NCBI RefSeq assembly: GCF_001194135.2
Contig: NC_068990.1
Span: 14,462,846 to 14,514,842, forward strand
From: Octopus bimaculoides
Lineage: Eukaryota
Reading direction: 5' to 3'
DNA: 51,997 bases
Shown piece by piece: positions 1-51,914 of the stretch. The notes under the pieces were generated by a model that was not told where the DNA came from, did not search any database, and worked only from the letters and a program-made list of their open reading frames with translations. Position 1 is the stretch's first letter, and each line of letters begins with the position of its first letter. The position numbers and the translations under genes are program-made.

Positions 1-1892
1 CGTTGCTGATGGTGCAACAGATGTTGTTGCTGACGGTGCAAGAGTTGTTGTTGCTGCTGTTGCTGTAGTCGTTGTTGCTGGTGGAGTAGTTGTTGTCGCT
101 GATGGTGCAGCGGTCGTTGTTGCTGAGGGTGCAGCCGTTGATGTTGCTGATGGTGCAGTAGATATCTCCGTCGTTACACCAGACGTTTGCTCAGAAACTA
201 CAACTGTAGGTGTACTTGCAGCAGTTGTTGTAGAGGGCACAATTGTGGTTGCTGTGGTCCCAGCTGTTGTTGTTGTTGCAGTACCAGTTGTTGCTGATGT
301 TCCCGTGGGAGATATTGCTGTTGTAGATGTTGTTTCTGTAGCAGTACTCGTTGTTGCTGATGGTGCAGCAGTCGTTGTGATTGCTGTTGTAGCACTTGTT
401 TTCACAGATGGTGCAGTAGTCGTTGCTGATGGTGCAACAGTTGTTGTTGCTGATGGTGGAGCAGTCGTTGTTGCTGATGCTNNNNNNNNNNCGGTACCAG
501 TTGTTGCTGATGGTGCAGTAGTTGTTGTTGCTGATGGTGCAGTAGATATCTCCGTCGTTACACCAGACGTTTGCTCAGAAACTACAACTGTAGGTGTACT
601 TGCAGCAGTTGTTGTAGAGGGCACAATTGTGGTTGCTGTGGTCCCAGCTGTTGTTGTTGTTTCAGTACCAATTGTTGCTGATGTTCCCGTAGGGGATATT
701 GCTGTTGTAGATGTTGTTTCTGTAGCAGTACTCGTTGTTGCTGATGGTGCAGCAGTCGTTGTTATTGCTGTTGTAGCACTTGTTTTCACAGATGGTGCAG
801 TAGTCGTTGCTGATGGTGCAACAGTTGTTGTTGCTGATGGTGCAACAGATGTTGTTGCTGATGGTGGAGCAGTCGTTGTTGCTGATGCTGCAACAGATGT
901 TGTTGCTGATGGTGCAACAGTTGTTGTTGTTGTTGCAGGACTTGTTTTCACAGATGGTACAGTTGTTGCCGATGATGCAGTCGTTGTTGCCGTCGATGCA
1001 GCAGTTGTTGTGGCTGATGGTGCAGCAGTTGTTGTTGCTGTTGTAACACTTGTTTTCACAGATGGTGCAGCAGTTGTTGTTGCTGATGGTGCAGCAGTTA
1101 TTGTTACTGATGGTGCAGCAGTTGTTGTTGCTGATGGTGCAGCAGTCGTTGTTGCTGATGGTGCAGCAGTCGTTGTTGCTGATGGTGCAGCAGTTGTTGT
1201 TGCTGATGGTGCAGTAGGTATCTCCGTCGTTACACCAGATGTTTGCTCAGAAACTACAACTGTAGGTGTACTTGCTGCAGTTGTTGTTGAGGGCACAATA
1301 GTGGTTGCTGTGGTCCCAACTGTTGTTGTTGTTGCGGTACCAGTTGTTGCTGATGGTGCAGTAGTTGTTGTTGCTGATGTTGGAGAAGTCGTTGTTGTTG
1401 CTGTTGTAGCTGTTGACACAGAGTATGTTGTTTGAGGTACAGCAGTGGTCGATGATGCCATAGTTACACCAGATGTAAGTTCTGAAACTGTAACAGTAGG
1501 GGTATGTGCAACAGTTGTTGATGCTGTAGTAGTTGTTGTGGTTGCACCAGTTGTTGTTACTGATGGTGTCATAGTTGATGGTGCTGGTGTTGCAGTTGTT
1601 GTTGTGGGTTTAGCTGTTGTTGATGAGGGTGATGCAGTAGTTGTTTTACTAAGTGTCACACTAGTTGCAGTAGGAGCAGTAGTTTTTGCACTGGAGCTTG
1701 CAGTGGTTGTTGCATAGGCAGTAGTTGTTCCCGCAGCTGCGGTAGTTGATATTACAGTTGGGGAAGCAGTTGTAGTTGCTGTTGGAGAGACGGTTGTCGT
1801 TCCTTCTGTTTCTGTGTACGCAGTTGCTGCTGTTGTTTTCATACTACTTGTAGTTGCTATGGATGTCGTCAATGAACTCAGTTTTGTTGAGC
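1..1892 (-). CDS. Large mucin PTS exon (~630 aa, Thr/Ala/Ser/Pro-rich, APSATTTA repeats), runs off the window
   Basis: Acceptor ttttctcttctccag|GC (phase 1): GSTKLSSLTTSIATTSSMKTTAAT... The frame is open to position 1 and preserved across the 10-N gap at 482-491. The ORF track shows only its antisense Val-rich shadow. Confidence 0.9.
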
Positions 1893-7495: not shown

Positions 7496-8627
7496 NNNNN
7501 NNNNNNNNNNNNNNNNNNNNNNNNNNNNNNNNNNNNNNNNNNNNNNNNNNNNNNNNNNNNNNNNNNNNNNNNNNNNNNNNNNNNNNNNNNNNNNNNNNNN
7601 NNNNNNNNNNNNNNTATATAGGTGCAGGAGTGGCTGTGTAGTAAGTAGCTTGCTTACCAACCACATAGTTCTGGGTTCAGTCCCACTGCATGGCACCTTG
7701 GGCAAGTGTCTTCTACTATAGCCTCATGCTGACCAAAGCCTTGTGAGTGGATTTGGTAGACGGAAACTGAAAGAAGCCCGTCGTATATATGTATGTGTAT
7801 ATATATATATGTGTGTGTGTGTATGTGTGTCTGTGTTTGTCTTCTATTATAGCCTCAGGCCAACCAAAGCCTTGGGAGTATAGAAACCGGGAAACCGGGC
7901 CCATGAGCCTGGCTAGGCTTTAAAAAAGAGCGCATAAATAAATAAAGTTGCTGGCCTTGTGCCACAATTGGAAACCATTATTTCACTGTTTCTCAAGCCC
8001 TCTCATTATTCTGCTTAGTAAGACATCATTTTCCTGACCTCCTCTCCAACCCATGCCATTTTAGATAACAGTTTTTCACGAGTTGCATACGGTTACTGTT
8101 TTCATGTTCAGACAAACTATCAAACAGCTTTCTTCATTTCTGTTTCTGCACCCCCAATCTGCTTTGGATGCTATGATTGATTGTGGTCTTTGTACTTGCG
8201 ATTTCATTCTTAGCCTGAAAATCCTATCGGGCATACAATTACAAACGAGCACTGCCTTTCAGGTTTCAACACATTCCCCTTTGATCTGCAAGCAAGAAAA
8301 TCATACATTTCCCCCCTGCTTCCGTACAGGTGTTGTACAAACTCTTTGAGAATAATCTAGAAGCTATGCAGTTCTAAACCTCAGAACTTCAATCCATACA
8401 AAACCATTTATGTCAAGTAAAAGTTCAACTGACCTAATGATCTTCAGGGAGTTCAGTATAATATGTACAACTTGTCACCAGCCACTACCCTTTTATCTTC
8501 AAGTAACACACACATACACACACACACATACATATATATGTGTATATACATATATGTATATACATATATGTATATACATATATGTATATACATATGTGTG
8601 TGTGCAAGTATGCGTGTAGGCACAGGC

Positions 8628-14239: not shown

Positions 14240-14644
14240 CTCTTTTACTCTTTTACTTGTTTCAGTCATTTGACTGTGGCCATGCTGGAGCACCGCCTTT
14301 AGTCGAGCAAATCGACCTTGGGACTTATTCTTTGTAAGCCTAGTACTTATTCTATCTGTCTCTTTTGCCGAACCGCTAAGTGACGGGGACATAAACACAC
14401 CAGCATCGGTTGTCAAGCAATGCTAATGGGGACAAATACAGACACACAAACAAACACACACACACATACATACATATATATGATGGGCTTCTTTCAGTTT
14501 CCGTCTACCAAATCCACTCACAAGGCTTTGGTCGGCCCGAGGCTATAGTAGAAGACACTTGCCCAAGGTGCCACGCAGTGGGACTGAACCTGGAACCATG
14601 TGGTTCGTAAGCAAGCTACTTACCACACAGCCACTCCTGCGCCT
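14240..14644 (-). mobile_element. Full-length tRNA-derived SINE (family B) with internal (TA/TG)n tract and (AAAGAGT)n tail
   Basis: Head ggcgcaggagtggctgtgtggtaag...ggttcagtcccactgcgtggcaccttgggcaagtgtctt with Pol III A-box and B-box-like motifs. Confidence 0.8.
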
Positions 14645-18977: not shown

Positions 18978-19343
18978 CATCATCATCATCATTGTTTCAT
19001 GTCCGCTTTCCATGCTAGCATGGGTTGGACAATTTGACTGAGGACTGGCAAACCAGATGGTTGCACCAGGCTCCAATCTGATCTGGCAGAGTTTCTACAG
19101 CTGGATGTCCTTCCTAATGCCAACCACTCCGAGAGTGTAGTGGATGCTTTTACATGCCACCAGCATGAGGGCCGGTCTGGCGGTACTGACAACAGCCACA
19201 CTCAAATGGTGTTTTTTATGTGTCACCTGCACAGGAGCCAGTCCAGTGGCACTGGCAAAGACCTCCCTCGAATATTTTTCACATGCCACCGGCACAAGTG
19301 CCAGTAAGGCGACGCTGGTAACAATCGCACTTGAATGGTGTTA
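18978..19343 (-). mobile_element. RTE-LINE 3' UTR copy
   Basis: Family sequence, tail-to-tail with 18430-18847. Confidence 0.75.
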
Positions 19344-19609
19344 TTATTAAAGCTGCAAAAACATCACAAAAATATCAGAAGAAATTGCTACTCAGAGTTT
19401 CACATTCCCATTCGTGAGGTGGTTGTGATCAAGGCTCTTGATCAAGATTTTTTATCACAACTGCCCAATGAACGGAACATGAAACTCTGAGTAGCAATTT
19501 TTTGTGATATTTTTGTGATGTTTTTGCAACTTTAATAGTAAAGCATATTACTTTACCTCCAGTATTCGAGTACTATTTTTTCCCACCTTGTTTCACATTT
19601 AGGTACTTA

Positions 19610-22398: not shown

Positions 22399-22826
22399 AC
22401 TCTTTTACTCTTTCTTTTACTTGTTTCAGTCATTTGACTGCGGCCATGCTGGAGCACCGCCTTTAGTCGAGCAAATCGACCCCATGACTTATTCTTTGGA
22501 AGCCTAGTACTTATTCTATCGATCTCTTTTGCCGAACTGCTAAGTTACAGGGACATAAAGACACCACAGCATCGGTTGTCAAGCGATGTTGGAGGGGGGG
22601 GGACAAACACAGACGCACAAACATACACATACATACACATATATATATATATACATATATACGATGGGCTTCTTTCAGTTTCTGCCTACCAAATCCACTC
22701 ACAAGGCTTTGGTCGGCCCGAAGCTATAGTAGAAGACACTTGCCCAAGGTGCCATGCAGTGGGACTGAACCCGGAACCATGTGGTTGGTAAGCAAGCTAC
22801 TTACCACACAGCCACTCCTGCGCCTA
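22399..22826 (-). mobile_element. Full-length tRNA-derived SINE (family B)
   Basis: Near-identical to 14240-14644. Partial or older copies at about 2780-3195(+), 7620-7850(+), 11365-11575(+), 29238-29395(-), 32270-32400(-), 33385-33505(-), 47152-47455(+), 48050-48180(-). Confidence 0.8.
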
Positions 22827-23367: not shown

Positions 23368-23672
23368 CTGTAAATAATAGAAGCGTACATGAAATAATAT
23401 TACATGGTTTCAAATTTTGGCACAAGGCCAGCAATTTTGGGAGAAGGAGTTGAGTCGATTACATCGACTCCCAGTGTTCAACTAGTACTTATTTTATCAA
23501 CCTCAAAAGGATAAAAGGTAAAGTCGACATCGGCAGAATTTGAACTCAGAACATAAAGATGGACGAAATGCCGCTAAGCACTTTGCCCGACATGCTAACG
23601 ATTCTGCTCACTCACCACCTTACTTGCAATATTACATCAAAAACAGTTTAATTCTCTGTATCATTATTATCA

Positions 23673-23727
<55 letters not shown>

Positions 23728-24147
23728 AAGGCTGAAAGGAATGAGGACTGAAAAATTCCACTTTGGTAAAACCCTCATTGACATTTTCAAGTTTCACTTG
23801 AAAACGAAAGTGNNNNNNNNNNNNNNNNNNNNNNNNNNNNNNNNNNNNNNNNNNNNNNNNNNNNNNNNNNNNNNNNNNNNNNNNNNNNNNNNNNNNNNNN
23901 NNNNNNNNNNNNNNNNNNNNNNNNNNNNNNNNNNNNNNNNNNNNNNNNNNNNNNNNNNNNNNNNNNNNNNNNNNNNNNNNNNNNNNNNNNNNNNNNNNNN
24001 NNNATCGGCAGAATTTGAACTCAGAACATAAAGATGGACGAAATGCCGCTAAGCACTTTGCCCGACATGCTAACGATTCTGCTCACTCACCATCTTACTT
24101 GCAATATTACATCAAAAACAGTTTAATTCTCTGTATCATTATTATCA

Positions 24148-24202
<55 letters not shown>

Positions 24203-24587
24203 AAGGCTGAAAGGAATGAGGACTGAAAAATTCCACTTTGGTAAAACCCTCATTGACATTTTCAAGTTTCACTTGAAAACGAAAGTGAGGGTGGAGAGGG
24301 AGGTGCTGTCTTCGAGTGAATTTATGAAAGGGTGAGTGAAAGTTGCAAAAATGGCAAGAGTGGATGATACCACTCTCAGTGTAGACATGTGAGTCAGAAG
24401 AAAGGAGTTGGAGAGGGTACTCGTCCTCGGTATTCAGGATGATCTTGGATGGTGGGGTTCTTCAATTATCCCTAAAGGTCCTCCTGTATCAGGGGGACCC
24501 CATCACTATGCCTTTTTTTTCTCTCTCTAGTGTTGTATATTATGTATACATGAAATTAAAGGATACAGACATACATACATACATACA

Positions 24588-25698: not shown

Positions 25699-28340
25699 CG
25701 TACGCATGTGTTTGTGAGTATGTGAGCATGCTTTAGAAACAAAAAAGATTTTCAGTTTCATATCCTGGTTGAGTATAATATGACTATTTCACATAAAATA
25801 ACTTTGTTCAGATATCAGTTCAAAGTCTTTTGCTCTCCCTATAAGTATTCTTGGGGATCGATTCCTTCACTTTTCTCTCTCTCTTTCCAACTCAAAGAAA
25901 GTGAGATACAAGGGAAGATTTGGTTGCTATTTCTGTCATGTTATGCGATAATGTAGTAGATCACCTCATTAGCTCAGGTTTGCCTGTTCTATAATCTACT
26001 TCAATGGTTTCCCACTATTAAGAATCTTAGTGAAAGAAATAGTTTTGCAGGTGATATCAGCAAAATTTTCAGTCATATCTGACAAAGAAACATCCTTGCT
26101 CCATTATCTACTGTTGGTTTTTAATCTGTATTCCTGCCTTTTGGAGCAGATATTGCATTTTTAGAATACTCCATTGCAATGTATGCCAAGACTCCATGCC
26201 TTCCTAGATTCTGCTATATAGCAAAGTCTGGTTATGTGTTCCATATTCTTTCACCCTTAAATATATAAGGGAGCCGTTAACAATTCAAACACCTATGTAG
26301 ATAACACAACCCTTACCAGATCCTTAACATTCTACAGGAATCATCCACACACAAGCACTGCTTGCAAAAAGTTTGTATGAATAGAGAGCTCAAGAATCTT
26401 CTTCACTAGAGACACGACAATAAAGTTTTGGTCAACATTACAAAAACCCAGTCACAAACACATATCAAGGAAACATTTTGTCCTTCACTCCACAAAAGAA
26501 CAAAAATTGCCCCCAATTCTAAAACACTATCTCTCACCATTTCCAGTAACCTTTTTTGATAACAGCACATAACATAATATTGCAAGCACTGAATTTCAAT
26601 GACTAAGATTCCTTCTCAGGGCCACAAAATACTTCAGTCCTGTTCAGGTGTCATGTAATTCACCTATGTACCTTGCCTGGGATTGAATTCAGAACCTTTA
26701 GGTGACTGCACTACATTTAGTAAATGCTTTTATCCACAATGCTATGCCTGTAGGCAGGGACAGAGTTATTTTAAAGCTTATAAATTTCCATTGATGTCTT
26801 ATATCAGCTCCATATTAATTGGATAATACAATTCTATATTACTGAGATGAGATACTTATTATGTACATTGCTTATTATGTAAGCAGAGTACATAATAAAT
26901 TCCTCATCTCAGAGATATAGAATTGTAATACATACTCATCAACACATTACAATCATTCACAGACATGATATCTCCTCTCTCTGTTTCTGGTATTGCTACT
27001 ACAGCAGTTTATACCTTTGCTGACCTCCTGTGCCTACACCCTCCATAAACATCTGTCTTTCTTTCTCTCATCACTCTGATTATGTTGTTTTCACCTGCAC
27101 AGCACATGTTTCTGAGTTTTCTTACTACATAACCTCAACTCATGCAAACTTCCTCTCTGCCTGCAACAGACAAAACAGGCATTCTAAACAATACATTCCA
27201 CATTGCATAGATACATTTAACTGCATCAATTTCAACAGTAATACCAGCTCTCATGTTTTGACAAAATTGTAAGATCAAAATCTCCTTGTTTGAGATTTCA
27301 AATCATTTGTATGTCATTCAGTTTGCTTCTAGAAAAATAAAACACTTTGTCCTACACATCTCAACTTACCGTTCTGTTAGGAAGTGATAACTGAAAAGCA
27401 GGTAATCTAGTAATATGGCCTGTAACAGGTTGACATCTTATACAAAGAGAGATTTATCTATCATCATGCAAAGACATTAGAGTAATGACAGTTCTGTTTT
27501 ATTTTTAGGTCTTTACATAAATGTCTGATTATAACAGGACAAAGTTCAGTAAAAAAAAATATTGAGGAAACCCAATGAAGGAAACCTGTGAAAAATTGCA
27601 CCCAGATATTCTTCAAATCACACAGTGCCATATATAAAACAATAAGAGGAGATATTTAATTTTTAAATAAAATAAGCGTTTAATGGTTAAATAAAAAATT
27701 GGAACAAATTTCATCAAAGGTCTTCGCAGTAAGAACTGACTTGATGTTAGACAACAACAAAATATTGATTTCAAATTTTGGCACAAAGCCAGCAATTTGG
27801 GGGGTGGGGGGTTAAGTCAATTAGATCGACCCCAGGATTCAACTGATATTAGTTTTATCGAATCCAAAAGGATGACAGGCAAAGTCAACCTCAGCAGCAT
27901 TTGAACTCAGAACTAAAGGTGGATGGAATCTTCTAAGCATTTTGCCCAGCATGGTAACCATTCTGCTAGCTCACCACCTTAAATAGCAACAAAATATTAA
28001 GCAATCTCGGTTTAAGAGAGTATTCAGAGGTTCTTGACAGAAGCAATAACTTCCTGAAAATAGCTGCCAACTATTTTCAATAAAAAGATGTCTGATGATC
28101 AACTATAAATGGACCTATCATAATATGGATGACCACAACAACAATGTGGTCAAACAGTATGGTACATTAAGGACAGATTTACCAAGTTTTTATGTCATCA
28201 CAGCTTAATTTGTTTGCAATAATTAGAACTGTCAGACATTTTCAGACATCAGTAAGACCTATATTATGTTAACAATATTCCAATTTCTGCCTACAAGATT
28301 AATGTGTCTTTTCATTTATTATATCTACATAAGTGTAAAG

Positions 28341-29032: not shown

Positions 29033-29481
29033 CTGGAAAAAAGAATATTTGAAATAATTCATGGAGTGCACACAGACACACATAAAATATATACACATAC
29101 ACTCACACACAGACATAAATATATATACACACACTCACACACAAGTATATATACATACACTCACATATAAATATATATATAAACACAAACACACACCTAC
29201 ACATATATAAATACACACATGCACACACTACACACAATGGGCTTCTTTCAGTTTCTATGAACCAAATTCACTCACAGGGCATTGATTAGCCTGGAGCTAT
29301 AATAGAGGGAACTTGACCAAGGTGCCATGCAATGGAACTGAAGGGGCTGAACTCAAAAGTGTGTGGTTGCAAATCAATCTCTTTAACCATGAGCCATTTG
29401 AGCCCCTATTTACAAATTTTGAAAGCTTGAGAATGAAAACAAACGAACACATTATTGATATTCAAAACTTAAAACATTTAC

Positions 29482-29919
29482 CTGGTGTAAAGCATCCAAG
29501 TATAGAAACTTTGACATCAAATTCTTCGGGGTAGACATCAATGTCCAAAGGTTTCGCTGATTCCAATAGAATACGAATTTCTGTGACATTTAAAAGTTCA
29601 TTTGTCTTATAATGTGTTTTTCCATTGATATATGAACCCAATGACTCAAATGCAAAATCATCTGCAAACTTCATCTGTATAATGTAGCTTCTCACGTTTC
29701 CTTTGACAATAATTTCTGAGAGTGGAACACCTTGAGGGTTATTCGTCAATTTGATGGTTATTGATGGTTGTGGTTCCTGATCAGAAGGTACCGGTACTCT
29801 CCAGCCTTCTTTGTCTGGTCGAATATTTACGGCTGTATCCATGTGACTAAGAGGTGTTGCAGTAATATGACGATCTGGGATGTATATTGGGCTTTTCAAA
29901 CCATCAATTAACTCACAAG
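29482..29919 (-). CDS. Exon: divergent discoidin/F5-8 type C-like domain 1 (CELIDGLKSPIYIPDRHIT...KVSILGCFTP)
   Basis: Acceptor atattttgacag|CT, donor CCAG|gtaaat; 438 nt, phase 1-1. N- and C-terminal Cys, IPD..IT, GW, EIRI and SILGC motifs as in FA58C. Paralogous to the exon at 22954-23367. Confidence 0.9.
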
Positions 29920-30744: not shown

Positions 30745-30789
<45 letters not shown>

Positions 30790-31092
30790 TTAAAGAAAAT
30801 GGAAAATGGAGAAATATTGATGAACAACAATTGACTTACATCAATTATTATTTATTACAAATAATAAAATAGATAATAAATAATAATTGATGTAAGTCAA
30901 TTTGTTGTTCATCAATATTTCTCCATTTTCTGTTTTCTTTAAATTTTGATTCTTGATAAACCCATGTTTATCTTTGTCTTTATCTATAATTTATGAGCAT
31001 TATATTCCCATGGTTAAACATAGGTAATATATCGGTAGTGTAATGGATACTTCTATCCCTTAGATGGTTATTTTAACCTCTAACTCAGCTAA

Positions 31093-38227: not shown

Positions 38228-38285
38228 CTGTAACAAGGGTACATGTTTCACAGCATTCACCTTCAGTTTTTTGAAGAATAAAACC
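38228..38285 (-). CDS. Exon: VWC C-terminus, GFILQKTEGECCETCTLVT
   Basis: Acceptor aataatttag|GGT, donor ACAG|gtttgt; 58 nt, phase 0-1. GECC-x2-C motif completes the VWC begun in the two previous exons. Confidence 0.85.
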
Positions 38286-38455
38286 CTAAATTATTGAAGA
38301 AATAAGATAGGTACTCAGTTTTAATATCATTTAGATTTAAAGAAAAATATTAGTACACTAACAAAACAATTTGTTTTTCGTCAAGATAGAAGGCCAATGT
38401 TCTTAAAAAGAAAGAATATATTTGGTTGCTTTGATGAAATATATTACAGTAAATT

Positions 38456-38724
38456 TTATTTGCCAACATAATGTGGTAGTCCTGGTTAGGATGAATGTTA
38501 TTGTTATTTAGCCCCAGGAAACATTGTCTCTAGTTGGCTATTGACACACTGTCTGCGTCCTTATATTTTTGAACATGAGCGTTTAGTGCCCCCACTAACT
38601 CCCTTGATGAAAAATGTAAGGACACAGATAGTTTGTCGATAGCCAGCTGGAGACAATATTTCCTGGGGCTAAACAACAATAACATTCGTCCTAACCAGGA
38701 CTGCCACATTATGTTGGCAAATAA
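38456..38724. repeat. Fold-back element (MITE-like): 115-bp inverted arms, 39-bp spacer
   Basis: 38456-38570 versus the reverse complement of 38610-38724: 11 mismatches, no indels. Confidence 0.9.
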
Positions 38725-40770
38725 TCTTTACTCTAGAGTACTGTTACTGAATGTTTCTCGTTCAGAGATTTAAAGATGATAATTTCTCTCTTTATGAAAT
38801 ATATTACATTTTTTCAAAATTTTTGTGGAGCCCTAAGACTCCAAATGCCAGTTATTCAGTTTTCATGGCATATAAGTGACTAAAATCACATTATGCCTGA
38901 GCAAGGTGCCAGTTTGTTGCAGTGGGAGGGGACAAGAGGATTACATTGACCCTTGTTTCTTGAATGATACTTTCTTTTATTGACCACATAGCCACCACTC
39001 ACCAGCTGAAGGAATAAAAGGCAAAGCTAACCATAGCAGGATTTGAACTCAGAACATAAAAAACGAGAAGAAGAGGCTACTAAATATTTTGTCTGACATG
39101 CTAAATATTCTGCCAGCTCACCACTTAATTAGTCATTTGTTATGTTATTTATTTTGGCAGTTGTTGAACATTTAGCTATTTTGCTATAATATATTTGATG
39201 AAATATTTTGTTTGTTTAAGATGGTGAGCTGGCAGAATTGTTAGCACATCAGTCAAAATGTTTTGCAGCATTTCATTGGTCTTTACGTCCTGAGTTCAAA
39301 TTCTTCCCACGGTCAACTTTGCTTTTCATCCTTTTGGGGTCGATAAAATAAGTACCAGTTGAGTACTGGGTCAATGTCATCAATTTACTCTCTCTCCTGA
39401 AATTTCTGGCCTTGTACCAAAATTTGAAACCAATATTTTGTGTTTGCTCAATTCATTTGTCTGAGAGAGAAGGTGGTTTTATACCAGATGTTGAAAGGCT
39501 AAAGTATGATTGAAGGATAAAATAACTTGGTCATAATTAAGCTGGTGTTCAGAACATAAATTAACATAAACTTTTGAGAGAAGTTTTAAATTTAGATACC
39601 TTTAAAACATGAAGGTTGCATCATAGAACCAGTAAAAGTGTTAGATAAGGCTATTGAAACTAAATAGGGTTAAGAATGTAGTTTGGCATTTTACACAAAG
39701 TCTTCATAGAGTCACATGTAAAATAGCATGATTAGTTCCAAGACAATTAGAACTCATTACATATTACTCAAACCTCATATCCAAACTTTATTATTTATAT
39801 ATGAGTATATCGAGGTACTCTTGTTCATCACTCACTACTTTCACCTCTTAATCCAATCTGGCAATCTGTCATTTATGAAAATGGGGCTTCCAGATGATCT
39901 GATCAATCGAACAACCTGCCCATGAAATTAAAATGCAAGTGGCTGAGTACTCCACAGATATGCATACCTTTAACATAGTTCTCAGAGAGATTCAGTATGA
40001 AACAGAATGTGATAAGGCTGGTCCTTTGAATTATAGTTACAACTCAGTTTTGCCAGCTGAATGAACTGAAGTGAAATAAAGTGTCTTGCTCAAGGACAAA
40101 ATGCACCACTGGGAATCGAACTCATGGCCTTATGATCAAGAGCCGAATCCCTAACCACTAAGCTCCTCTACTTCTATCTTTAACCATCATTTACTTTCCT
40201 CTCACATTCCAATAAAATTATCCCCTCTCCCCTCACCTCCAATGATCCACTGTCCATATCCTCTTGTTTGCTCACCATTTTGTATATCTCGAACGTTTGT
40301 CAGACATTCCATCACTATTTTATTTCCTTCCAACTATTCCCATCCACCCCTATATATAAATGTAGGGTAGACATGTATCTCCTCTATAGCCAGACATCTG
40401 TGCTTGCCCTTCAGTCATATTTTAGCCTCTCAACACCAGGCATAAAGCCACCTTCCTTTCTCAAATACTCCATGCCAACATTGTAGTGAGAGCTTTTTAC
40501 ATTTCCATTTTCCTTTGTTCTTTTCCTATTTTTCTAGTTACTCAGCAACCACACCAGCACCAATGCCCACCACCCCACAAAATAAAGGCACTCAGTGCAC
40601 ACAGTAAGGTGGTTGACATTAGGAAGGGTATGCAAGCCATAGAAACCATACACAAAACTGACACTGGAACTCGACACAGCCATGGGGCACACCAGATCTT
40701 GTCAAACTGTTCAACCCATGTCAGGATGGAAAATGGATGTTAAATAATGATGATAATGATGTATACCGAA

Positions 40771-41142: not shown

Positions 41143-41259
41143 AGGTTTGCAAATCAATTCTGGACAATTGTCTGAATGGTTGGTCTTCTGGATTTTGTTT
41201 CCAATACAGGCATACTGAACACAGATTGGATCAGTGGTATCATTCCAAGATTCATATGG
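41143..41259 (-). CDS. Exon: VWC/TILa core, PYESWNDTTDPICVQYACIGNKIQKTNHSDNCPELICKP
   Basis: Acceptor tttttttgttag|CCA, donor CCT|gtgagt; 117 nt, phase 0-0. Joins the previous exon to give RK-PYESW (VWC GExW-type motif). Not in the ORF track. Confidence 0.85.
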
Positions 41260-43167: not shown

Positions 43168-43370
43168 CTTACGAATATTACCGAATTCATCTTGACAATT
43201 GCAGTCATTGCTGTCAATACAGGCTGTACCATTGAATGATGTCTTGTATTTACATTCACAGCAGTTCTCCTTAGATTTAGCATAACAGTACGTTCTATCA
43301 CTGTGGCAAACCTCTTTTCTACAACCTGTGCAACTGTCTGATGCGTAGTCATAATTATCTTCGTCACATT
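43168..43370 (-). CDS. Exon: TIL-like Cys-rich domain plus start of VWC, CDEDNYDYASDSCTGCRKEVCHSDRTYCYAKSKENCCECKYKTSFNGTACIDSNDCNCQDEFGNIRK
   Basis: Acceptor ttattactttctgaag|AA (AAG type), donor AAG|gttagt; 203 nt, phase 1-0. C-x-C-x5-F-NG-x2-C-I-x4-C-x-C ending typical of TIL domains in VWF/mucins. Confidence 0.87.
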
Positions 43371-43491: not shown

Positions 43492-44453
43492 NNNNNNNNN
43501 NNNNNNNNNNNNNNNNNNNNNNNNNNNNNNNNNNNNNNNNNNNNNNNNNNNNNNNNNNNNNNNNNNNNNNNNNNNNNNNNNNNNNNNNNNNNNNNNNNNN
43601 NNNNNNNNNNNNNNNNNNNNNNNNNNNNNNNNNNNNNNNNNNNNNNNNNNNNNNNNNNNNNNNNNNNNNNNNNNNNNNNNNNNNNNNNNNNNNNNNNNNN
43701 NNNNNNNNNNNNNNNNNNNNNNNNNNNNNNNNNNNNNNNNNNNNNNNNNNNNNNNNNNNNNNNNNNNNNNNNNNNNNNNNNNNNNNNNNNNNNNNNNNNN
43801 NNNNNNNNNNNNNNNNNNNNNNNNNNNNNNNNNNNNNNNNNNNNNNNNNNNNNNNNNNNNNNNNNNNNNNNNNNNNNNNNNNNNNNNNNNNNNNNNNNNN
43901 NNNNNNNNNNNNNNNNNNNNNNNNNNNNNNNNNNNNNNNNNNNNNNNNNNNNNNNNNNNNNNNNNNNNNNNNNNNNNNNNNNNNNNNNNNNNNNNNNNNN
44001 NNNNNNNNNNNNNNNNNNNNNNNNNNNNNNNNNNNNNNNNNNNNNNNNNNNNNNNNNNNNNNNNNNNNNNNNNNNNNNNNNNNNNNNNNNNNNNNNNNNN
44101 NNNNNNNNNNNNNNNNNNNNNNNNNNNNNNNNNNNNNNNNNNNNNNNNNNNNNNNNNNNNNNNNNNNNNNNNNNNNNNNNNNNNNNNNNNNNNNNNNNNN
44201 NNNNNNNNNNNNNNNNNNNNNNNNNNNNNNNNNNNNNNNNNNNNNNNNNNNNNNNNNNNNNNNNNNNNNNNNNNNNNNNNNNNNNNNNNNNNNNNNNNNN
44301 NNNNNNNNNNNNNNNNNNNNNNNNNNNNNNNNNNNNNNNNNNNNNNNNNNNNNNNNNNNNNNNNNNNNNNNNNNNNNNNNNNNNNNNNNNNNNNNNNNNN
44401 NNNNNNNNNNNNNNNNNNNNNNNNNNNNNNNNNNNNNNNNNNNNNNNNNNNNN

Positions 44454-44511
<58 letters not shown>

Positions 44512-45781
44512 TGACGAAAATTATAAGAAATACCATACAGAGAGTTAAGGAATCAATGCTATGTATGCTCAATTGAAATTTTGTGTTACAAGTACGGTCA
44601 GCCGTCCCTAGTGTCCAAATGCTTTCCCTAATTCTTTTAGGTATCTATGTAGTCTTAAACAGAGATGGACACACTCTCAGCCCCAACCCAAATTTTGACT
44701 CATTGGAATATCTAGGGTATGATAACTGGAGGAAGAGAGGGTAGCACCTACACCCAGCTCATACTCATTACAACTCATTACAATAAAAAAAAAATATAAC
44801 AGCTGTGACACTGAGTTGGGGGTCCTAAAACTATGTCAGTAATATTAAAACAACACCCAAGATTTGAATCATTAGGCATGCAACAGTAATGTATTAGATG
44901 TGATCATTATATATGTGTGATCATTATCTAAAGTGGTGAGCTGGCAGAATCGTTAGCATGTTGGGCGAAATGCTTAGTGGTATTTCATCTGCCGTTACAT
45001 TCTGAGTTCAAATTCCACTGAGGTCAACTTTGCCTTTCATCCTTTTGGGGTCAGTAAATTAAGTACCACTGGGGTCGATGTAATCGACTAGTCCCCTCTC
45101 CCAAAATTTTAAGGCCTTGTGCTCTCAGCAAAAAGGATTATTTTAGTACTGTCTCTTGACAAAATGACAAAGTCATTAGGGTATTAGATACAAAGCCTTG
45201 CAGTAATTTTTACAGTTCTATGCAATGCAGATTCAATTCCTGCCAACACCAACTTTGCTTTTCACTTTCCTAGAATCTGTAAATACAATACCAGTCCAGG
45301 ACTGATATTGGCAGAATTCATAGAATATAGGATAGATAGCCTTGCAGGAGCTGTCCTGGACCTCTGTATTCAGACAGCAGAATTGCAAGAATAATGGTAC
45401 CAAGCTATATCAATTCTTGCTTTTCTCCCAGAGAACACAAGGGGAATGAATAGAAGAGACTAGTAAACATTGGCAATTGCTGGTCTTTCACAAAATAACC
45501 TTGTCTGTGTCAGCATCTTAGAGAGGGATTTTCCAAGTGTAGATCCATAATCCCATGAGATGAACAGAAGCCCTGATATATAATACAAGATAGTTGAATA
45601 TCAGCAGACTGGTAAAGATACCAATTACATACTTAGTAGCATTCAAATCGATGTAGTTTTGTTTGGTATTAGAAGGATGTCAGCTTGCCACTTCCAGAAT
45701 ATTAGAAATATTAGGAAAAAGATAACGATAAGTTATACTTACAAAATTAGATGATAATAATATAATAAAGCTGATACTCAC

Positions 45782-45787
45782 TAGTTT
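45782..45787 (-). CDS. Candidate 6-nt microexon AAACTA (adds Gln-Thr; next junction codon becomes Lys)
   Basis: Minus strand reads ctttattttcattttatttcag|AAACTA|gtgagt: long pyrimidine tract, consensus donor, frame-preserving. Confidence 0.6.
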
Positions 45788-45867
45788 CTGAAATAAAATG
45801 AAAATAAAGTTTTATAATGGATTCATTATAATGTGTTTGTAAACAAGGCTATTGTGTGTGTGTGTGT

Positions 45868-46098
45868 TATTTATTTACTACCCACAAGGGGCTACACACA
45901 GAGGGGACAAACAAGGACAGACAAATGGATTAAATCGATTATATCGACCCCAGTGCGTAACTGGTACTTATTCAATCGACCCCGAAAGGATGAAAGGCAA
46001 AGTCAACCTCGGCGGAATTTGAACTCAGAACGTAGCGGGCAGACGAAATACCGCTAAGCATTTCGCCCGGTGTGCTAACGGTTCTGCCAGCTCGCCGC

Positions 46099-46100
<2 letters not shown>
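45868..46100 (-). mobile_element. Young tRNA-derived SINE (family C)
   Basis: Head ggcggcgagctggcagaaccgttagcac...gagttcaaattccgccgagg and core gcctttcatcctttcggggtcgat...aagtaccag. Older copies at about 8650-8870(-), 23405-23625(-), 27770-27985(-), 34040-34240(-), 39220-39435(+), 44933-45130(+). Confidence 0.8.
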
Positions 46101-46177
<77 letters not shown>

Positions 46178-47311
46178 ATTTACTTGACAATTTGTGAAAT
46201 AGCTTAGTCTCTACATGAAGAAGCTAAATGTATGAAACCTTTCAAGGAATTGCTTTAGAAGAGCAGCTACTGTTATTTAACTATTTACTGTGTTGAGATA
46301 CACCATGAGATATTGTCTATGAGTTAGTGAAAAAGTCCATATGGAGTTTTGTGACCTACTAGAAATAGCAGCCAAATTTCTTTGAAATCACATCCTACCA
46401 TCCTAAAAGTACAGGGAATAGATGGCATAACATGATCCTTTGAAATACACTTCTGCCTAAAAAAAAGACTGGAAAGTCTCATCTGGAATACCTTTGATCA
46501 TTGGTCAGTTGAAGCAGAACTCCTAGGAACTCCTTCTGCATGAAAACATATACAGTTTAGCATCTAGCATACCTAATGCAATGAGCCAAAACATGTTTAA
46601 CCAATGGAAATTACACACACAATGAAGAGAAAAATCATTTGAGTTGATGATAATTCTTGTTACAAAAGGCAAAGGTAAGAAATTGGAAATCCTTATTATC
46701 CAGAAACTTACTTCATTGACCACATAAATATCACTATTTTATATCAGTCCTGAGAATGACTTTAAACTGCATCCCGTTTTGGGGACCTTGGTTTGGGAGT
46801 TCCAGGGATTGAGAAGTGCAAACCACCCTTTTACCAATACTGTTCCCAGGTCTACTCTGATATGGTGTAGTAGCACATTTCAGAGGCTATGCGTTTATTA
46901 GCACATCACAAAATTGCCTCTGAAAGAAAGTCACTCACAGAAAACCCTGTGGACCCAGAGCAGATAAGTCCCTTCAGCTCTTTAGCTGTTCATCTAAGAG
47001 AAGGTTACTCTATACAAATCTTGCATCTAGTTAACTACTAGACTCATGGCACTTTTTGTGCCAGACTAATATATGTTTAAAGAACAACTGAATGAGACGG
47101 GCTCTCCACAAGCCATGCACAATATAATAATATTCATCACATTAATTGTTCAGGCATGGATGTGTGATAAGAAGCTTGCTTCCCAACCACATGGTTCTGG
47201 GTTCAGTCCCACTGGGGGGTACCTTTACCAAGTGTTTTCTTCTATAATCTCAGCCAGACCAAAGCCTTGTGAGTGAATTTCATCTACAGAAACTGAAAGA
47301 AGCCTGTCGCA

Positions 47312-47366
<55 letters not shown>

Positions 47367-47653
47367 ATATCTTTGTGTCTGTGTTTGTCCCCTCACCACC
47401 AGTTAGCAACCAGTGTTGGTGTAATTATGTCCCAATAACTTAGCAGTTCAGCGAAGGGAGGTGTAATTTAAGGGAGATTTAACTGCTATTTTTAGTGGGT
47501 CAGTAAATTGCATAGACGCTTCCACTTTGGATGGTGGTAGTACAAGGATGCCATTTTACAACTTGCATAATATTTGAAAGATCAGGAAAGGATATAATGA
47601 GTTTATACTTACATAGTACATAAGTTACTATTTACACCAAAAATGATACTTAC

Positions 47654-47659
47654 GGTTAT
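47654..47659 (-). CDS. Candidate 6-nt microexon ATAACC (adds His-Asn)
   Basis: Minus strand reads catttttatctttctttcatttcag|ATAACC|gtaagt: long pyrimidine tract, consensus donor, frame-preserving. Confidence 0.6.
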
Positions 47660-48476
47660 CTGAAATGAAAGAAAGATAAAAATGCAAGAAATCTTGATAA
47701 TGTACACATTTGATTTTTGCAAATAATAAATTTTTATTCAATGCTATATCTCCATTTTTTTTACTTTCTTTTGAATGACTATAAACCATGATTTATATAT
47801 AAATCTATTGTTTTATGAATATTATTATTCACAACAAATATTAGGTATTAAACCAGTAATTCATTGGATGATGATACCATCCCTCAATGAGACTAATTTA
47901 ACCTCTAATTGAATTTATATATATATATATATATATATCGTTCATTCGTTCATCATCATCATCGTTTAACGTCTGCTTTCCATGCTAGCATGGGTTGGAC
48001 GATTTGATATATATATATGAATAAATACACACATACACTCATGCATATGACAAGTTTCTTTCAATTTTGATCCACCAAATCCACTGGCATGTCTTCTGTC
48101 AGCTCAGGACTATAGTAGAAGACATTTAAGACACTTGCCCAAAGTGCCATGCAGTGAGGTTGAACCTGAAATCATGTGGTTACTCTTTTTCACAGCAAGG
48201 AGAACTAGGCCATTCAGTATCACTGATATTATGTATCTCCAGTATTTACATTCAAAGGTTCGATAGTACAGCTTGTGGATCAATACAAGTATTGTAAATA
48301 TCTCACATCAAAATAGCATTTGATGTTTGAGGAAATGTAGATATTAAAGAAATATGAAAGAGACAGTCAATGGTAATTCTTAAAAATTCCAGGAATGAGA
48401 GAATAAAATTAAGATTTTAAAATCATTAATAAAATACAAAATGTATCAGAGTAACAAAATAATAAGAAATACTTAC

Positions 48477-48554
48477 GGCAGTTTTCTAATTCATCAATGC
48501 AGTTTGGACAGTCACATCTGTTATCACAATTAAATACATCTGTACATCGCCTTC
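48477..48554 (-). CDS. Exon: compact LDL-receptor class A-like module, (G)RRCTDVFNCDNRCDCPNCIDELENC
   Basis: Acceptor atgattacag|GA, donor TGCC|gtaagt; 78 nt, phase 1-1. CD..xDC...DE..C acidic motif resembles the C-terminal half of LDLa. Confidence 0.8.
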
Positions 48555-49272: not shown

Positions 49273-49356
49273 AATTATACAAGAATGCCTCACGTTAACT
49301 ACCATAATAAACACGTGTTTATTACGGTAGTTAACGTGAGACATTCTTGTATAGTT
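49273..49356. repeat. 84-bp loopless palindrome next to an assembly gap
   Basis: 42-bp arms with 3 mismatches, centred on aataaacacgtgtttatt. Confidence 0.9.
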
Positions 49357-51766: not shown

Positions 51767-51914
51767 CACAGTAAGGACAGCATTTTCCAAACATATAATA
51801 CTTTTTATACGGTGGGAAGCACTCAATGTCGCAAACTGTTGTATCACAATCAATGCTGTTCACTCCAACACAAGTACAAGTTTTGCAGTTGTTTACACTC
51901 CAGGTATCATTGAT
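51767..51914 (-). CDS. Exon: VWC (von Willebrand C) domain, INDTWSVNNCKTCTCVGVNSIDCDTTVCDIECFPPYKKYYMFGKCCPYC
   Basis: Acceptor tttttgttttag|ATC, donor TGTG|gtaaat; 148 nt, phase 0-1. W-x4-C-x2-C-x-C ... CC-x2-C pattern of VWC. Not in the ORF track. Confidence 0.85.

What the first reader, a model, noticed from the sequence alone, without database searches (positions are those of the whole stretch)
45782..47659. Two 6-nt microexons that together build an N-glycosylation site (AND-gate glyco-switch)
Seen: the intron between the LDLa-like exon (ends TGC C) and the TIL exon (starts AA TGT) contains two isolated 6-nt segments. Each has a long pyrimidine tract plus CAG and a consensus donor: cag|ATAACC|gtaagt and cag|AAACTA|gtgagt. 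Translated outcomes: both included = C-H-N-Q-T-K-C; first only = C-H-N-Q-C; second only = C-Q-T-K-C; neither = C-Q-C. Established: N-X-S/T is the N-glycosylation sequon. Inference: the NQT sequon is split across the two microexons, so splicing could switch both a glycan and the interdomain spacing (1, 3 or 5 residues between two Cys). Gene predictors usually miss 6-nt exons, so this is likely unannotated.
Basis: partly seen in the sequence, partly recalled or inferred. Interest (0 to 1): 0.85.

Follow-up and report, generated by a model that had tools for sequence, protein, structure and literature searches.

The report
Two candidate 6-nt microexons, unproven
An intron of a mucin-like gene holds two related 6-base segments with excellent splice signals, but nothing reachable here shows they are spliced into mRNA, and the form that skips both matches a one-residue Cys-x-Cys junction seen in two distant homologues.

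Summary
On the minus strand, cag|ATAACC|gtaagt (47659-47654) and cag|AAACTA|gtgagt (45787-45782) lie in the intron between an LDLa-like exon (48554-48477) and a TIL-like exon (43370-43168).

New findings:
- The two units are paralogues. Each sits in a ~200-nt island (148-nt core, 71% identity), the only significant similarity inside this intron.
- Their acceptors rank in the top 0.2% and 1% of all AGs in the window, and splice-signal columns are better conserved than the rest of the island.
- The gene is a gel-forming-mucin/VWF-like gene with VWC, Cys-rich modules, a discoidin-like domain and a PTS exon.
- Two homologues have exactly one residue at the equivalent junction: C-S-C in a Macrostomum protein and LDLa-C-P-C-VWC in a Logan contig. 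The skipped form (C-Q-C) is therefore the conserved product.

No transcript or related-species DNA was reachable. The window's own SINE copies show that splice-like pairs can persist without function.

My estimates: unused or rarely used pseudo-microexons about 0.5, genuine alternative microexons about 0.3, and the NQT AND-gate about 0.05. RNA-seq junction reads would settle it.

The parts
48477..48554 (-). Upstream conventional exon (78 nt, phase 1 to 1), encoding (G)RRCTDVFNCDNRCDCPNCIDELENC. It is a six-Cys, LDLa-like module and ends TGC C|gtaagtat.
   Evidence: Pfam gives no LDLa hit even at E<=10. BLAST aligns it to an LDLa (Pfam E=5.6e-4) in P0017.
47531..47750 (-). Paralogous island 1: about 220 nt of intron running from about -90 to +125 around microexon candidate 1.
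   Evidence: nhmmer and BLAST; the 148-nt core 47680-47535 is 71% identical to 45808-45664, E=1e-16.
47660..47690 (-). Polypyrimidine tract and CAG acceptor of candidate 1 (ttcttgcatttttatctttctttcatttcag). TTTAT, a possible branch point, lies at -21.
   Evidence: The acceptor score is in the top 0.2% of the 2577 AGs on this strand and is stronger than all six real acceptors in the window. Motifs.
47654..47659 (-). Microexon candidate 1, ATAACC. In phase 1 it adds H-N and regenerates Q.
47648..47653 (-). Donor GTAAGT of candidate 1 (intron positions +1..+6 all consensus; exon side ACC is not consensus).
   Evidence: top 5% of GTs.
45660..45855 (-). Paralogous island 2, around microexon candidate 2. 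A SINE plus a (CA)n run lie immediately upstream of it.
45788..45812 (-). Polypyrimidine tract and CAG acceptor of candidate 2 (aaactttattttcattttatttcag). TTTAT lies at -21, as in copy 1.
   Evidence: (top 1% of AGs).
45782..45787 (-). Microexon candidate 2, AAACTA. In phase 1 it adds T-K after Q.
45776..45781 (-). Donor GTGAGT of candidate 2.
   Evidence: top 2% of GTs.
43492..44453 (.). 962-N assembly gap inside the same intron, flanked by (TA)n. Unknown sequence could hide further elements.
43168..43370 (-). Downstream conventional exon (203 nt, phase 1 to 0), starting AA TGT. It encodes (Q)CDEDNYDYASDSCTGCRKEVCHSDRTYCYAKSKENCCECKYKTSFNGTACIDSNDCNCQDEFGNIRK, a TIL-like Cys-rich module.
   Evidence: No Pfam TIL hit. 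34% identity over 147 aa to the Macrostomum VWFD protein P0003.
51767..51914 (-). Preceding exon of the same gene: VWC domain (phase 0 to 1).
   Evidence: Pfam VWC E=4.5e-7, above the gathering score.
41143..41259 (-). Next exon (phase 0 to 0), the N-terminal half of a VWC-like module (PYESWNDTTDPICVQYACIGNK...).
38228..38285 (-). Next exon (phase 0 to 1), the C-terminal part of the VWC-like module (GFILQKTEGECCETCTLVT).
29482..29919 (-). 438-nt exon (phase 1 to 1) encoding a discoidin-like (F5/8-C-like) domain. It was used to identify the gene family.

Best explanation
The locus is a locally duplicated ~200-nt piece of intron. Each copy carries a very strong 3' splice site, six bases and a consensus 5' splice site. 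It lies in a 5.1-kb intron of a gel-forming-mucin/VWF-like gene.

The mRNA that makes the conserved protein most likely joins 48477 directly to 43370. That gives Cys-Gln-Cys, the one-residue C-x-C junction also seen in the two homologues that cover an equivalent junction.

The two 6-nt units are most likely pseudo-microexons, skipped in all or nearly all transcripts. From general knowledge, a 6-nt exon is too short for ordinary exon definition and is included only with dedicated enhancers. No such enhancer is evident here. Their survival in both copies would then be descent from one chance unit plus luck, and the NQT sequon a by-product of A/T-rich sequence.

Shown: the motifs, their paralogy, their strength, the gene context, and C-x-C in homologues. 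Inferred: that they are not used.
For: 1. Background rate. Strong acceptor+donor pairs at short spacing occur by chance at about 0.07 per length per strand in this window, so about one in-frame unit per window-strand is expected.
2. Non-independence. The two units are duplicates.
3. Internal neutral control. The window's SINE family carries a built-in AG-21 nt-GTGAGT pair. It is intact in 3/3 copies at 93-100% identity to the reference copy (which is itself one of the three) and in 1/6 copies at 73-88%. Splice-like pairs therefore persist without function in this genome.
4. Conserved junction. P0003 (Macrostomum VWFD protein) aligns over the LDLa-like, TIL-like and VWC exons at 34% identity, with C-S-C opposite C-Q-C. 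P0017 has an LDLa ending ...EKDC, then P, then the first Cys of a VWC.
5. Enhancer motifs. There is no Rbfox GCAUG within 150 nt upstream or 300 nt downstream of either unit. UGC upstream is present only for mx1, at -27 and -62, and is absent within 150 nt of mx2.
6. The hexamers themselves are the least conserved part of the island (2/6 identical).
7. Sequons are common in this protein and in random translation of the intron.
Against: - The acceptors are stronger than five (mx2) or all six (mx1) of the real acceptors in the window, and the donors match those of real exons (GTAAGTAT, GTGAGTAT).
- The only significant similarity within the intron is centred on the two units.
- Splice-signal columns are 84% identical against 56% for the rest of the island (Fisher p=0.003). 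Other equally conserved blocks do exist, and T-rich tracts align easily.
- Neutral retention of AG, GTRAGT and exact spacing in both copies at 71% identity is only about 0.07 by calculation. That is in line with the 1/6 seen in the SINE control at about 80% identity.
- Both units preserve the frame with no stop in any combination.
- A one-residue linker after an LDLa-like module is unusually short in general, so longer linkers are not implausible.
- Absence of evidence for use is not evidence of absence: no RNA data could be consulted.
Confidence: 0.5

Rival explanations
1. Genuine alternatively spliced microexons. A 6-nt cassette exon arose and was tandemly duplicated. One or both copies are included in some tissues, lengthening the C-x-C junction from 1 to 3 or 5 residues. 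The first reader's AND-gate, in which NQT is glycosylated only when both are included, is the special case with independent regulation of both. I give that sub-case about 0.05.
For: - Very strong polypyrimidine tracts and consensus donors, at or above the level of the real exons.
- Frame preserved and no stop in all four combinations.
- Paralogous islands span about -90 to +125 around each unit. From my own knowledge, that is the usual extent of conserved flanks around regulated cassette exons.
- Splice-signal columns are better conserved than the rest.
- A TTTAT branch-point-like motif is conserved at -21 in both copies.
- Tiny symmetric exons separated by introns of up to 5 kb, used combinatorially in secreted proteins, are known from Schistosoma MEGs (PMC10526429).
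Against: - No transcript, annotation or orthologous DNA could be obtained.
- The skipped junction C-x-C is the conserved one.
- The gene is a mucin-like secreted protein, not the neuronal class in which microexons are concentrated (own knowledge).
- mx2 has no upstream UGC, and neither unit has GCAUG.
- The hexamers share only 2 of 6 bases.
- One more N-glycan on a protein with a large PTS domain and five other sequons would be a small change.
Confidence: 0.3
2. Constitutive microexons. Both hexamers are always spliced in, the protein simply reads C-H-N-Q-T-K-C, and there is no switch.
For: Splice-site strength. A 5-residue linker would be ordinary between Cys-rich modules. The preceding junction in this gene...CCPYCG-RR-C, has three residues between Cys.
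Against: Homologues have exactly one residue at the junction. From general knowledge, constitutive 6-nt exons are very rare, and two in a row rarer still.
Confidence: 0.05
3. The islands are functional intronic elements other than coding microexons. They could be decoy or poison cassettes: each acceptor can also pair with a second conserved GTAAGTATAA about 40 nt downstream, giving 47-nt and 45-nt exons with in-frame stops. They could instead be splicing-regulatory sequence, or two old copies of an unrecognised low-copy repeat family.
For: A second consensus donor is conserved in both copies (47612 and 45742). Several blocks in the island are as conserved as the splice signals.
Against: An 11-nt identical run is expected about once in a 148-nt alignment at 71% identity. 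No Rfam family matches, and RNA folding shows no excess structure on either strand. No third copy exists in the window.
Confidence: 0.15

Closest known systems
Bilaterian alternatively spliced microexons (3-27 nt; Srrm4/eMIC-dependent neural programme). Own knowledge: Irimia et al. 2014, Torres-Mendez et al. 2019. An O. bimaculoides splicing dataset is used in bioRxiv 10.64898/2026.09.05.749416.
   Same: Tiny, frame-preserving cassette units with strong splice sites and similar intronic flanks.
   Different: No expression evidence. The host is a secreted mucin-like gene. The upstream UGC motif is present only for mx1. The candidates interrupt a C-x-C junction seen in two homologues rather than a surface loop of a cytoplasmic protein.
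Schistosoma micro-exon genes (MEGs), PMC10526429
   Same: Symmetric exons of 3-81 bp separated by introns of up to 5 kb, in secreted proteins, with protein variants produced by combinatorial exon skipping.
   Different: MEGs are small genes built almost entirely of microexons. Here there are two candidate units inside one intron of a large gene made of conventional domain exons.
Splicing-controlled N-glycosylation (FBLN2 exon 9, PMC12095903; neuroligin-1 splice site B, own knowledge)
   Same: Inclusion or exclusion of an exon adds or removes an N-X-S/T sequon on an extracellular protein.
   Different: In the known cases the sequon lies within one conventional exon. Here it would be assembled across two separate 6-nt exons, which has not been shown.
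Tandem exon duplication giving alternative or mutually exclusive exons (own knowledge: Kondrashov and Koonin 2001; Letunic et al. 2002)
   Same: Two adjacent paralogous exon units with paralogous flanks in one intron.
   Different: The units are only 6 nt and 1.87 kb apart, and frame is kept whether 0, 1 or 2 are included, so nothing enforces exclusivity.
Intronic pseudoexons and repeat-borne splice-site pairs
   Same: Consensus-quality AG...GTRAGT pairs in introns that are not used. The window's own SINE family provides examples.
   Different: These two are not in a recognisable multi-copy repeat, and their acceptors are among the strongest in the window.

Membership tests
Alternatively spliced microexon | Bounded by a usable 3' splice site (Py tract + YAG) and 5' splice site (GTRAGT) | tested here: met
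   acceptors in the top 0.2% and 1%, donors in the top 5% and 2%, of all AG/GT in the window by a rough PWM.
Alternatively spliced microexon | Length a multiple of 3, with no stop in the host frame in any combination | tested here: met
Alternatively spliced microexon | Junction-spanning transcripts that contain the exon | not testable with these tools
   No RNA-seq access. The protein databases hold no protein containing the flanking exons. A metagenome scan for any of the four junctions found 0.
Alternatively spliced microexon | Exon and flanking intron conserved in related species | not testable with these tools
   No related genome covering this intron could be reached. The only substitute is conservation between the two paralogous copies within this genome: splice signals 26/31 against the rest 100/180.
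eMIC/Srrm4-type neural microexon | UGC-containing enhancer close upstream of the 3' splice site | tested here: inconclusive
   mx1 has TGC at -27 and -62. mx2 has none within 150 nt.
N-glycosylation sequon | N-X-S/T with X not Pro, in a secretory-pathway protein | tested here: met
   NQT exists only in the both-included translation. A secreted, mucin-like context is inferred from VWC, PTS and homologues. Occupancy is not testable.
LDL-receptor class A domain (PF00057) | Significant match to the Pfam model, with six Cys and a D-x-S-D-E calcium cage | tested here: not met
   No Pfam hit at E<=10. There are six Cys and an IDE...C tail, but only 23 residues from first to last Cys. BLAST aligns the exon at 27% identity to a P0017 segment that Pfam calls LDLa at E=5.6e-4. 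It is therefore LDLa-like by resemblance only.
TIL domain (PF01826) | Significant match to the Pfam model | tested here: not met
   No hit at E<=10 for the exon or for the homologous P0003 unit. The exon aligns by BLAST to modules of TIL/VWD/C8-containing proteins. It is therefore TIL-like.
Gel-forming mucin / VWF-like protein | VWC modules, Cys-rich TIL-like modules and a long Pro/Thr/Ser-rich domain (VWD-C8 assemblies elsewhere in the protein) | tested here: inconclusive
   VWC is met. A PTS exon of at least 630 aa is met. Homologues are named mucin-2-like and VWFD domain-containing and carry VWD/C8/TIL. No VWD or C8 lies inside this window.
Schistosoma-type micro-exon gene | Most of the coding sequence made of tandem symmetric microexons | tested here: not met
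   The other exons in the window are 58-438 nt or longer conventional domain exons.
Recursive splice site (ratchet point) | Juxtaposed AG|GTRAGT with zero-length exon, in a very long intron | tested here: not met
   Six bases separate AG and GT, and the intron is about 5.1 kb.

The most novel reading that the evidence does not exclude
Both 6-nt units are real, independently regulated cassette microexons of tandem-duplicate origin. Only their joint inclusion assembles an N-Q-T sequon inside a C-x-C junction that two distant homologues share, in a mucin-like protein. Splicing would then combinatorially set both linker length (1, 3 or 5 residues) and one N-glycan.
Probability: 0.05. Interest if true: 0.6.

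Novelty: new member of a known kind. Interest (0 to 1): 0.3.

Why it matters
If the units are used, they would be among the shortest exons documented in a mollusc. They would also be a rare case of tandemly duplicated microexons, and an example of a glycosylation site assembled across two exons. That would interest people who study microexon evolution and annotation, because gene predictors miss such exons.

If they are not used, the locus is a useful caution. In this A/T-rich, repeat-rich genome, consensus-quality splice-site pairs a few bases apart arise and persist without function, so sequence alone cannot call a 6-nt exon.

In either case the effect on a protein with a large O-glycosylated PTS domain and several other sequons would be local.

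Tried and rejected
- Word-indexed protein searches with the LDLa-like+TIL-like exons and with the 145-aa exon found nothing. No annotated or ORF-called protein from this locus or a close relative is in that collection.
I therefore used the 145-aa exon alone.
- A metagenome scan with a gapped pattern covering all four possible junctions gave 0 hits.
- AlphaFold of the 145-aa exon without an alignment gave pLDDT 52.7, too low for a fold search. The domain was instead named from Pfam F5/8-C hits in homologues P0017 and P0015.
- Idea that the islands host an intronic snoRNA or miRNA: no meaningful Rfam match (best E=0.08 and 0.92, far below gathering), and MFE z-scores lie between -1.1 and +1.1. 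Rejected.
- Idea of a dispersed repeat: nhmmer --max with the two-copy profile found no third copy in the window. This cannot be tested genome-wide.
- Idea of a larger tandem duplication: no further collinear similarity between the two halves of the intron. A small duplication cannot be told apart from an old large one with only the island retained.
- Recursive splicing and MEG-type gene: rejected on anatomy (see the membership tests).
- Weak resemblance between the hexamers and the ends of the flanking exons (AAAACTGCC|gtaagtat against ATAACC|gtaagtat; E=3.7) is not significant.
- ARAGORN found no tRNA-like SINE heads.
- More C-x-C examples would not decide whether the microexons are used.

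Full report
**1. What is in the sequence**

Read on the minus strand, the interval contains ttcttgcatttttatctttctttcatttcag|ATAACC|gtaagtatca (hexamer 47659-47654) and aaactttattttcattttatttcag|AAACTA|gtgagtatca (hexamer 45787-45782). Each 15-mer around the hexamer is unique in the window.

Both lie in the intron between two conventional exons. One is a 78-nt exon at 48554-48477, which ends ...GAA AAC TGC C|gtaagtat. The other is a 203-nt exon at 43370-43168, which starts ctgaag|AA TGT GAC.

The observation and coordinates are therefore confirmed. The same intron contains a 962-N gap at 43492-44453.

**2. The gene**

The surrounding exons on the minus strand form a phase-consistent model:
- VWC exon 51914-51767, with Pfam VWC E=4.5e-7.
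- The six-Cys LDLa-like exon.
- The TIL-like exon.
- Two exons of a VWC-like module, 41259-41143 and 38285-38228.
- A 438-nt exon, 29919-29482.
- A Pro/Thr/Ser-rich tandem-repeat exon, open from 1892 to the window's start.

Pfam does not recognise the LDLa-like or TIL-like exons even at E<=10, so those labels are resemblances and not memberships.

An exhaustive HMMER search with the 145-aa exon found 18 proteins. They include:
- 'mucin-2-like' of the chiton Liolophura sinensis.
- A 3666-aa 'VWFD domain-containing protein' of Macrostomum lignano, with VWD, C8, TIL and VWC.
- A Logan contig protein (P0017) with TIL, VWC, F5/8-type-C and an LDLa.

The gene is therefore a gel-forming-mucin/VWF-like secreted protein, and the 145-aa exon is a divergent discoidin-like domain. 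I could not confirm the source organism.

**3. More than chance?**

YAG-N(1-30)-GTRAGT occurs roughly once per length per strand in this window. I ranked sites with a rough PWM built from general metazoan consensus frequencies and used only for ranking.
- The two acceptors fall in the top 0.2% and 1% of all AGs. mx1 is stronger than all six real acceptors in the window, and mx2 is stronger than five of them.
- The donors fall in the top 5% and 2% of GTs.
- Only nine equally strong pairs exist at spacings 1-51 on both strands.

That gives about 0.07 per length per strand per window. One in-frame unit somewhere in a window is unremarkable, but two 6-nt units in one 4-kb stretch would be.

They are not independent, however. 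The flanks are paralogous: a 148-nt core at 71% identity with E=1e-16, extending to about 200-220 nt by MAFFT and nhmmer. This is the only significant similarity between the two halves of the intron, and no third copy exists in the window.

**4. Evidence for constraint**

Within the island:
- The 21 nt before the AG are 17/21 identical.
- The first 10 intron bases after the hexamer are 9/10 identical.
- The hexamers themselves are 2/6 identical.
- The rest of the island is 100/180 identical.
- Splice signals against the rest give Fisher p=0.003.

Other 10- and 21-column blocks in the island are equally conserved, and T-rich tracts align easily.

Neutral retention of AG, GTRAGT and exact spacing at 71% identity is about 0.71^8 = 0.07. 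The window offers an empirical control. Its SINE family carries a built-in AG-21 nt-GTGAGT pair, kept in 3/3 copies at 93-100% identity to the reference (which is itself one of the three) but in only 1/6 copies at 73-88%. Retention in both microexon copies is therefore mildly surprising under neutrality, but no more than that. The control also shows that splice-like pairs inherited by duplication are a normal feature of this genome.

**5. Evidence on the canonical junction**

The Macrostomum protein aligns across the LDLa-like, TIL-like and VWC exons (147 aa, 34% identity). It has G-C-S-C-AKPYEE exactly opposite N-C-Q-C-DEDNYD.

P0017 has ...CDKRNDCSDMSDEKDC-P-CYTDGK.... Pfam places the end of an LDLa at the first of these Cys and the start of a VWC at the second.

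Both cases have exactly one residue between the Cys, as in the skipped isoform. The direct 48477-to-43370 junction is thus the form shared with the two distant family members that could be examined. Including one or both hexamers would stretch a C-x-C motif that, at least in the Macrostomum protein, belongs to the TIL-like module itself. This does not exclude lineage-specific alternative inclusion. It does make constitutive inclusion unlikely, and it weakens the idea that the longer linkers are needed.

**6. Regulatory motifs and other readings**

Neither unit has a GCAUG within 150 nt upstream or 300 nt downstream. An upstream UGC exists only for mx1. A TTTAT at -21 is shared by both.

A second consensus donor, GTAAGTATAA, is conserved about 40 nt downstream of each hexamer. 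Using it would give 47-nt and 45-nt exons with in-frame stops. An identical 11-mer is expected about once in such an alignment, so I give this little weight.

No Rfam family matches the intron, and neither island folds better than shuffles on either strand, so a hosted small RNA is unlikely.

**7. The sequon**

NQT is a valid N-X-T and appears only when both units are included. The exon-encoded 348 aa already contain five sequons (NDT, NGT, NDT, NHS, NVT). Random translation of this intron yields 0.56 sequons per 100 codons. The protein also carries a very large PTS domain.

A sequon in a five-residue insert is therefore a 2-3% coincidence, and it was picked out after the fact. As tandem duplicates, the two units could equally be used one at a time (HNQ or QTK), in which case NQT would never form.

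**8. What could not be done**

No transcript data, no annotation of this locus and no related genome covering this intron were reachable.
- Word-indexed protein searches found nothing.
- A gapped-pattern scan of metagenome contigs for any of the four junctions found nothing.
- The closest relative in the collections is a ~945-nt genomic Logan contig (runs ERR12370321 and ERR12370323). It covers only the discoidin-like exon, at 48% identity and with the same phase-1 boundaries.

**9. Verdict**

I weighed a low prior for any 6-nt splice-like unit being real, a moderate boost from the paralogous, splice-signal-biased conservation, and a moderate penalty from the C-x-C junction shared with two homologues and the lack of enhancer motifs. 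My estimates are:
- About 0.5 that the units are unused or noise-level pseudo-microexons.
- About 0.3 that at least one is a genuine alternative microexon.
- About 0.05 that both are constitutive.
- About 0.15 that the islands are some other intronic element or repeat.
- About 0.05 for the specific AND-gate glyco-switch, as a sub-case of the 0.3.

Junction-read counting in RNA-seq of the source species would settle it quickly.

Noticed in passing
window 1-1892, minus strand: A Pro/Thr/Ser-rich tandem-repeat reading frame (…TTAAPSATTTAAPSATTT…, at least 630 aa). It is open from an acceptor at ttctccag|GC (1892) to the start of the window. This is the mucin PTS domain of the same gene and enters in phase 1, as the discoidin-like exon leaves.
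   Followed up: partly
window 29482-29919, minus strand; L002 and L003: A 438-nt phase 1-1 exon encodes a discoidin-like domain that Pfam does not recognise directly. Only 18 relatives exist among 1.84 billion representatives, repeated up to 7 times between PTS stretches in a chiton 'mucin-2-like' protein. Logan genomic contigs from runs ERR12370321 and ERR12370323 carry the orthologous exon (48% aa identity) with the same splice phases.
   Followed up: partly
window 22703-22723, 14522-14542, 29276-29296 (minus); 7722-7742 (plus): A SINE family present in at least 9 copies carries a built-in tatag|21 nt|gtgagtg pseudo-exon. I used it here as a neutral control for the persistence of splice-like pairs.
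   Followed up: yes
window 39003-39005, minus strand: ccttttattccttcag|CTG|gtgagtgg is a 3-nt unit with strong splice signals in the phase-0 intron between exons 41259-41143 and 38285-38228. It would add one Leu. It lies in SINE-like sequence, so it is probably repeat-borne.
   Followed up: no
window 47612 and 45742, minus strand: A second consensus donor, GTAAGTATAA, is conserved about 40 nt downstream of each hexamer. Paired with the same acceptors it would make 47-nt and 45-nt exons with in-frame stops.
   Followed up: partly
window 23529-23812 and 24004-24287: Two 284-nt direct repeats, 99.6% identical, immediately flank the 191-N gap at 23813-24003. This looks like an assembly artefact (the same sequence placed on both sides of a gap).
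   Followed up: no
window 38445-38735, 19341-19541, 30786-30946, 2454-2633, 26824-26930, 49273-49356: Six self-complementary (palindromic) stretches of 84-292 nt at 75-93% identity. They may be hairpin-forming or MITE-like elements.
   Followed up: no
L001 (Logan SRR23372229 contig, 11.7 kb): This contig encodes VWD-C8-TIL units followed by the 1272-aa P0017 (TIL, VWC, discoidin-like repeats, LDLa, PTS) as a series of same-strand ORFs. It is a mucin/VWF-like gene or transcript of an unidentified organism with an architecture related to the window's gene.
   Followed up: no
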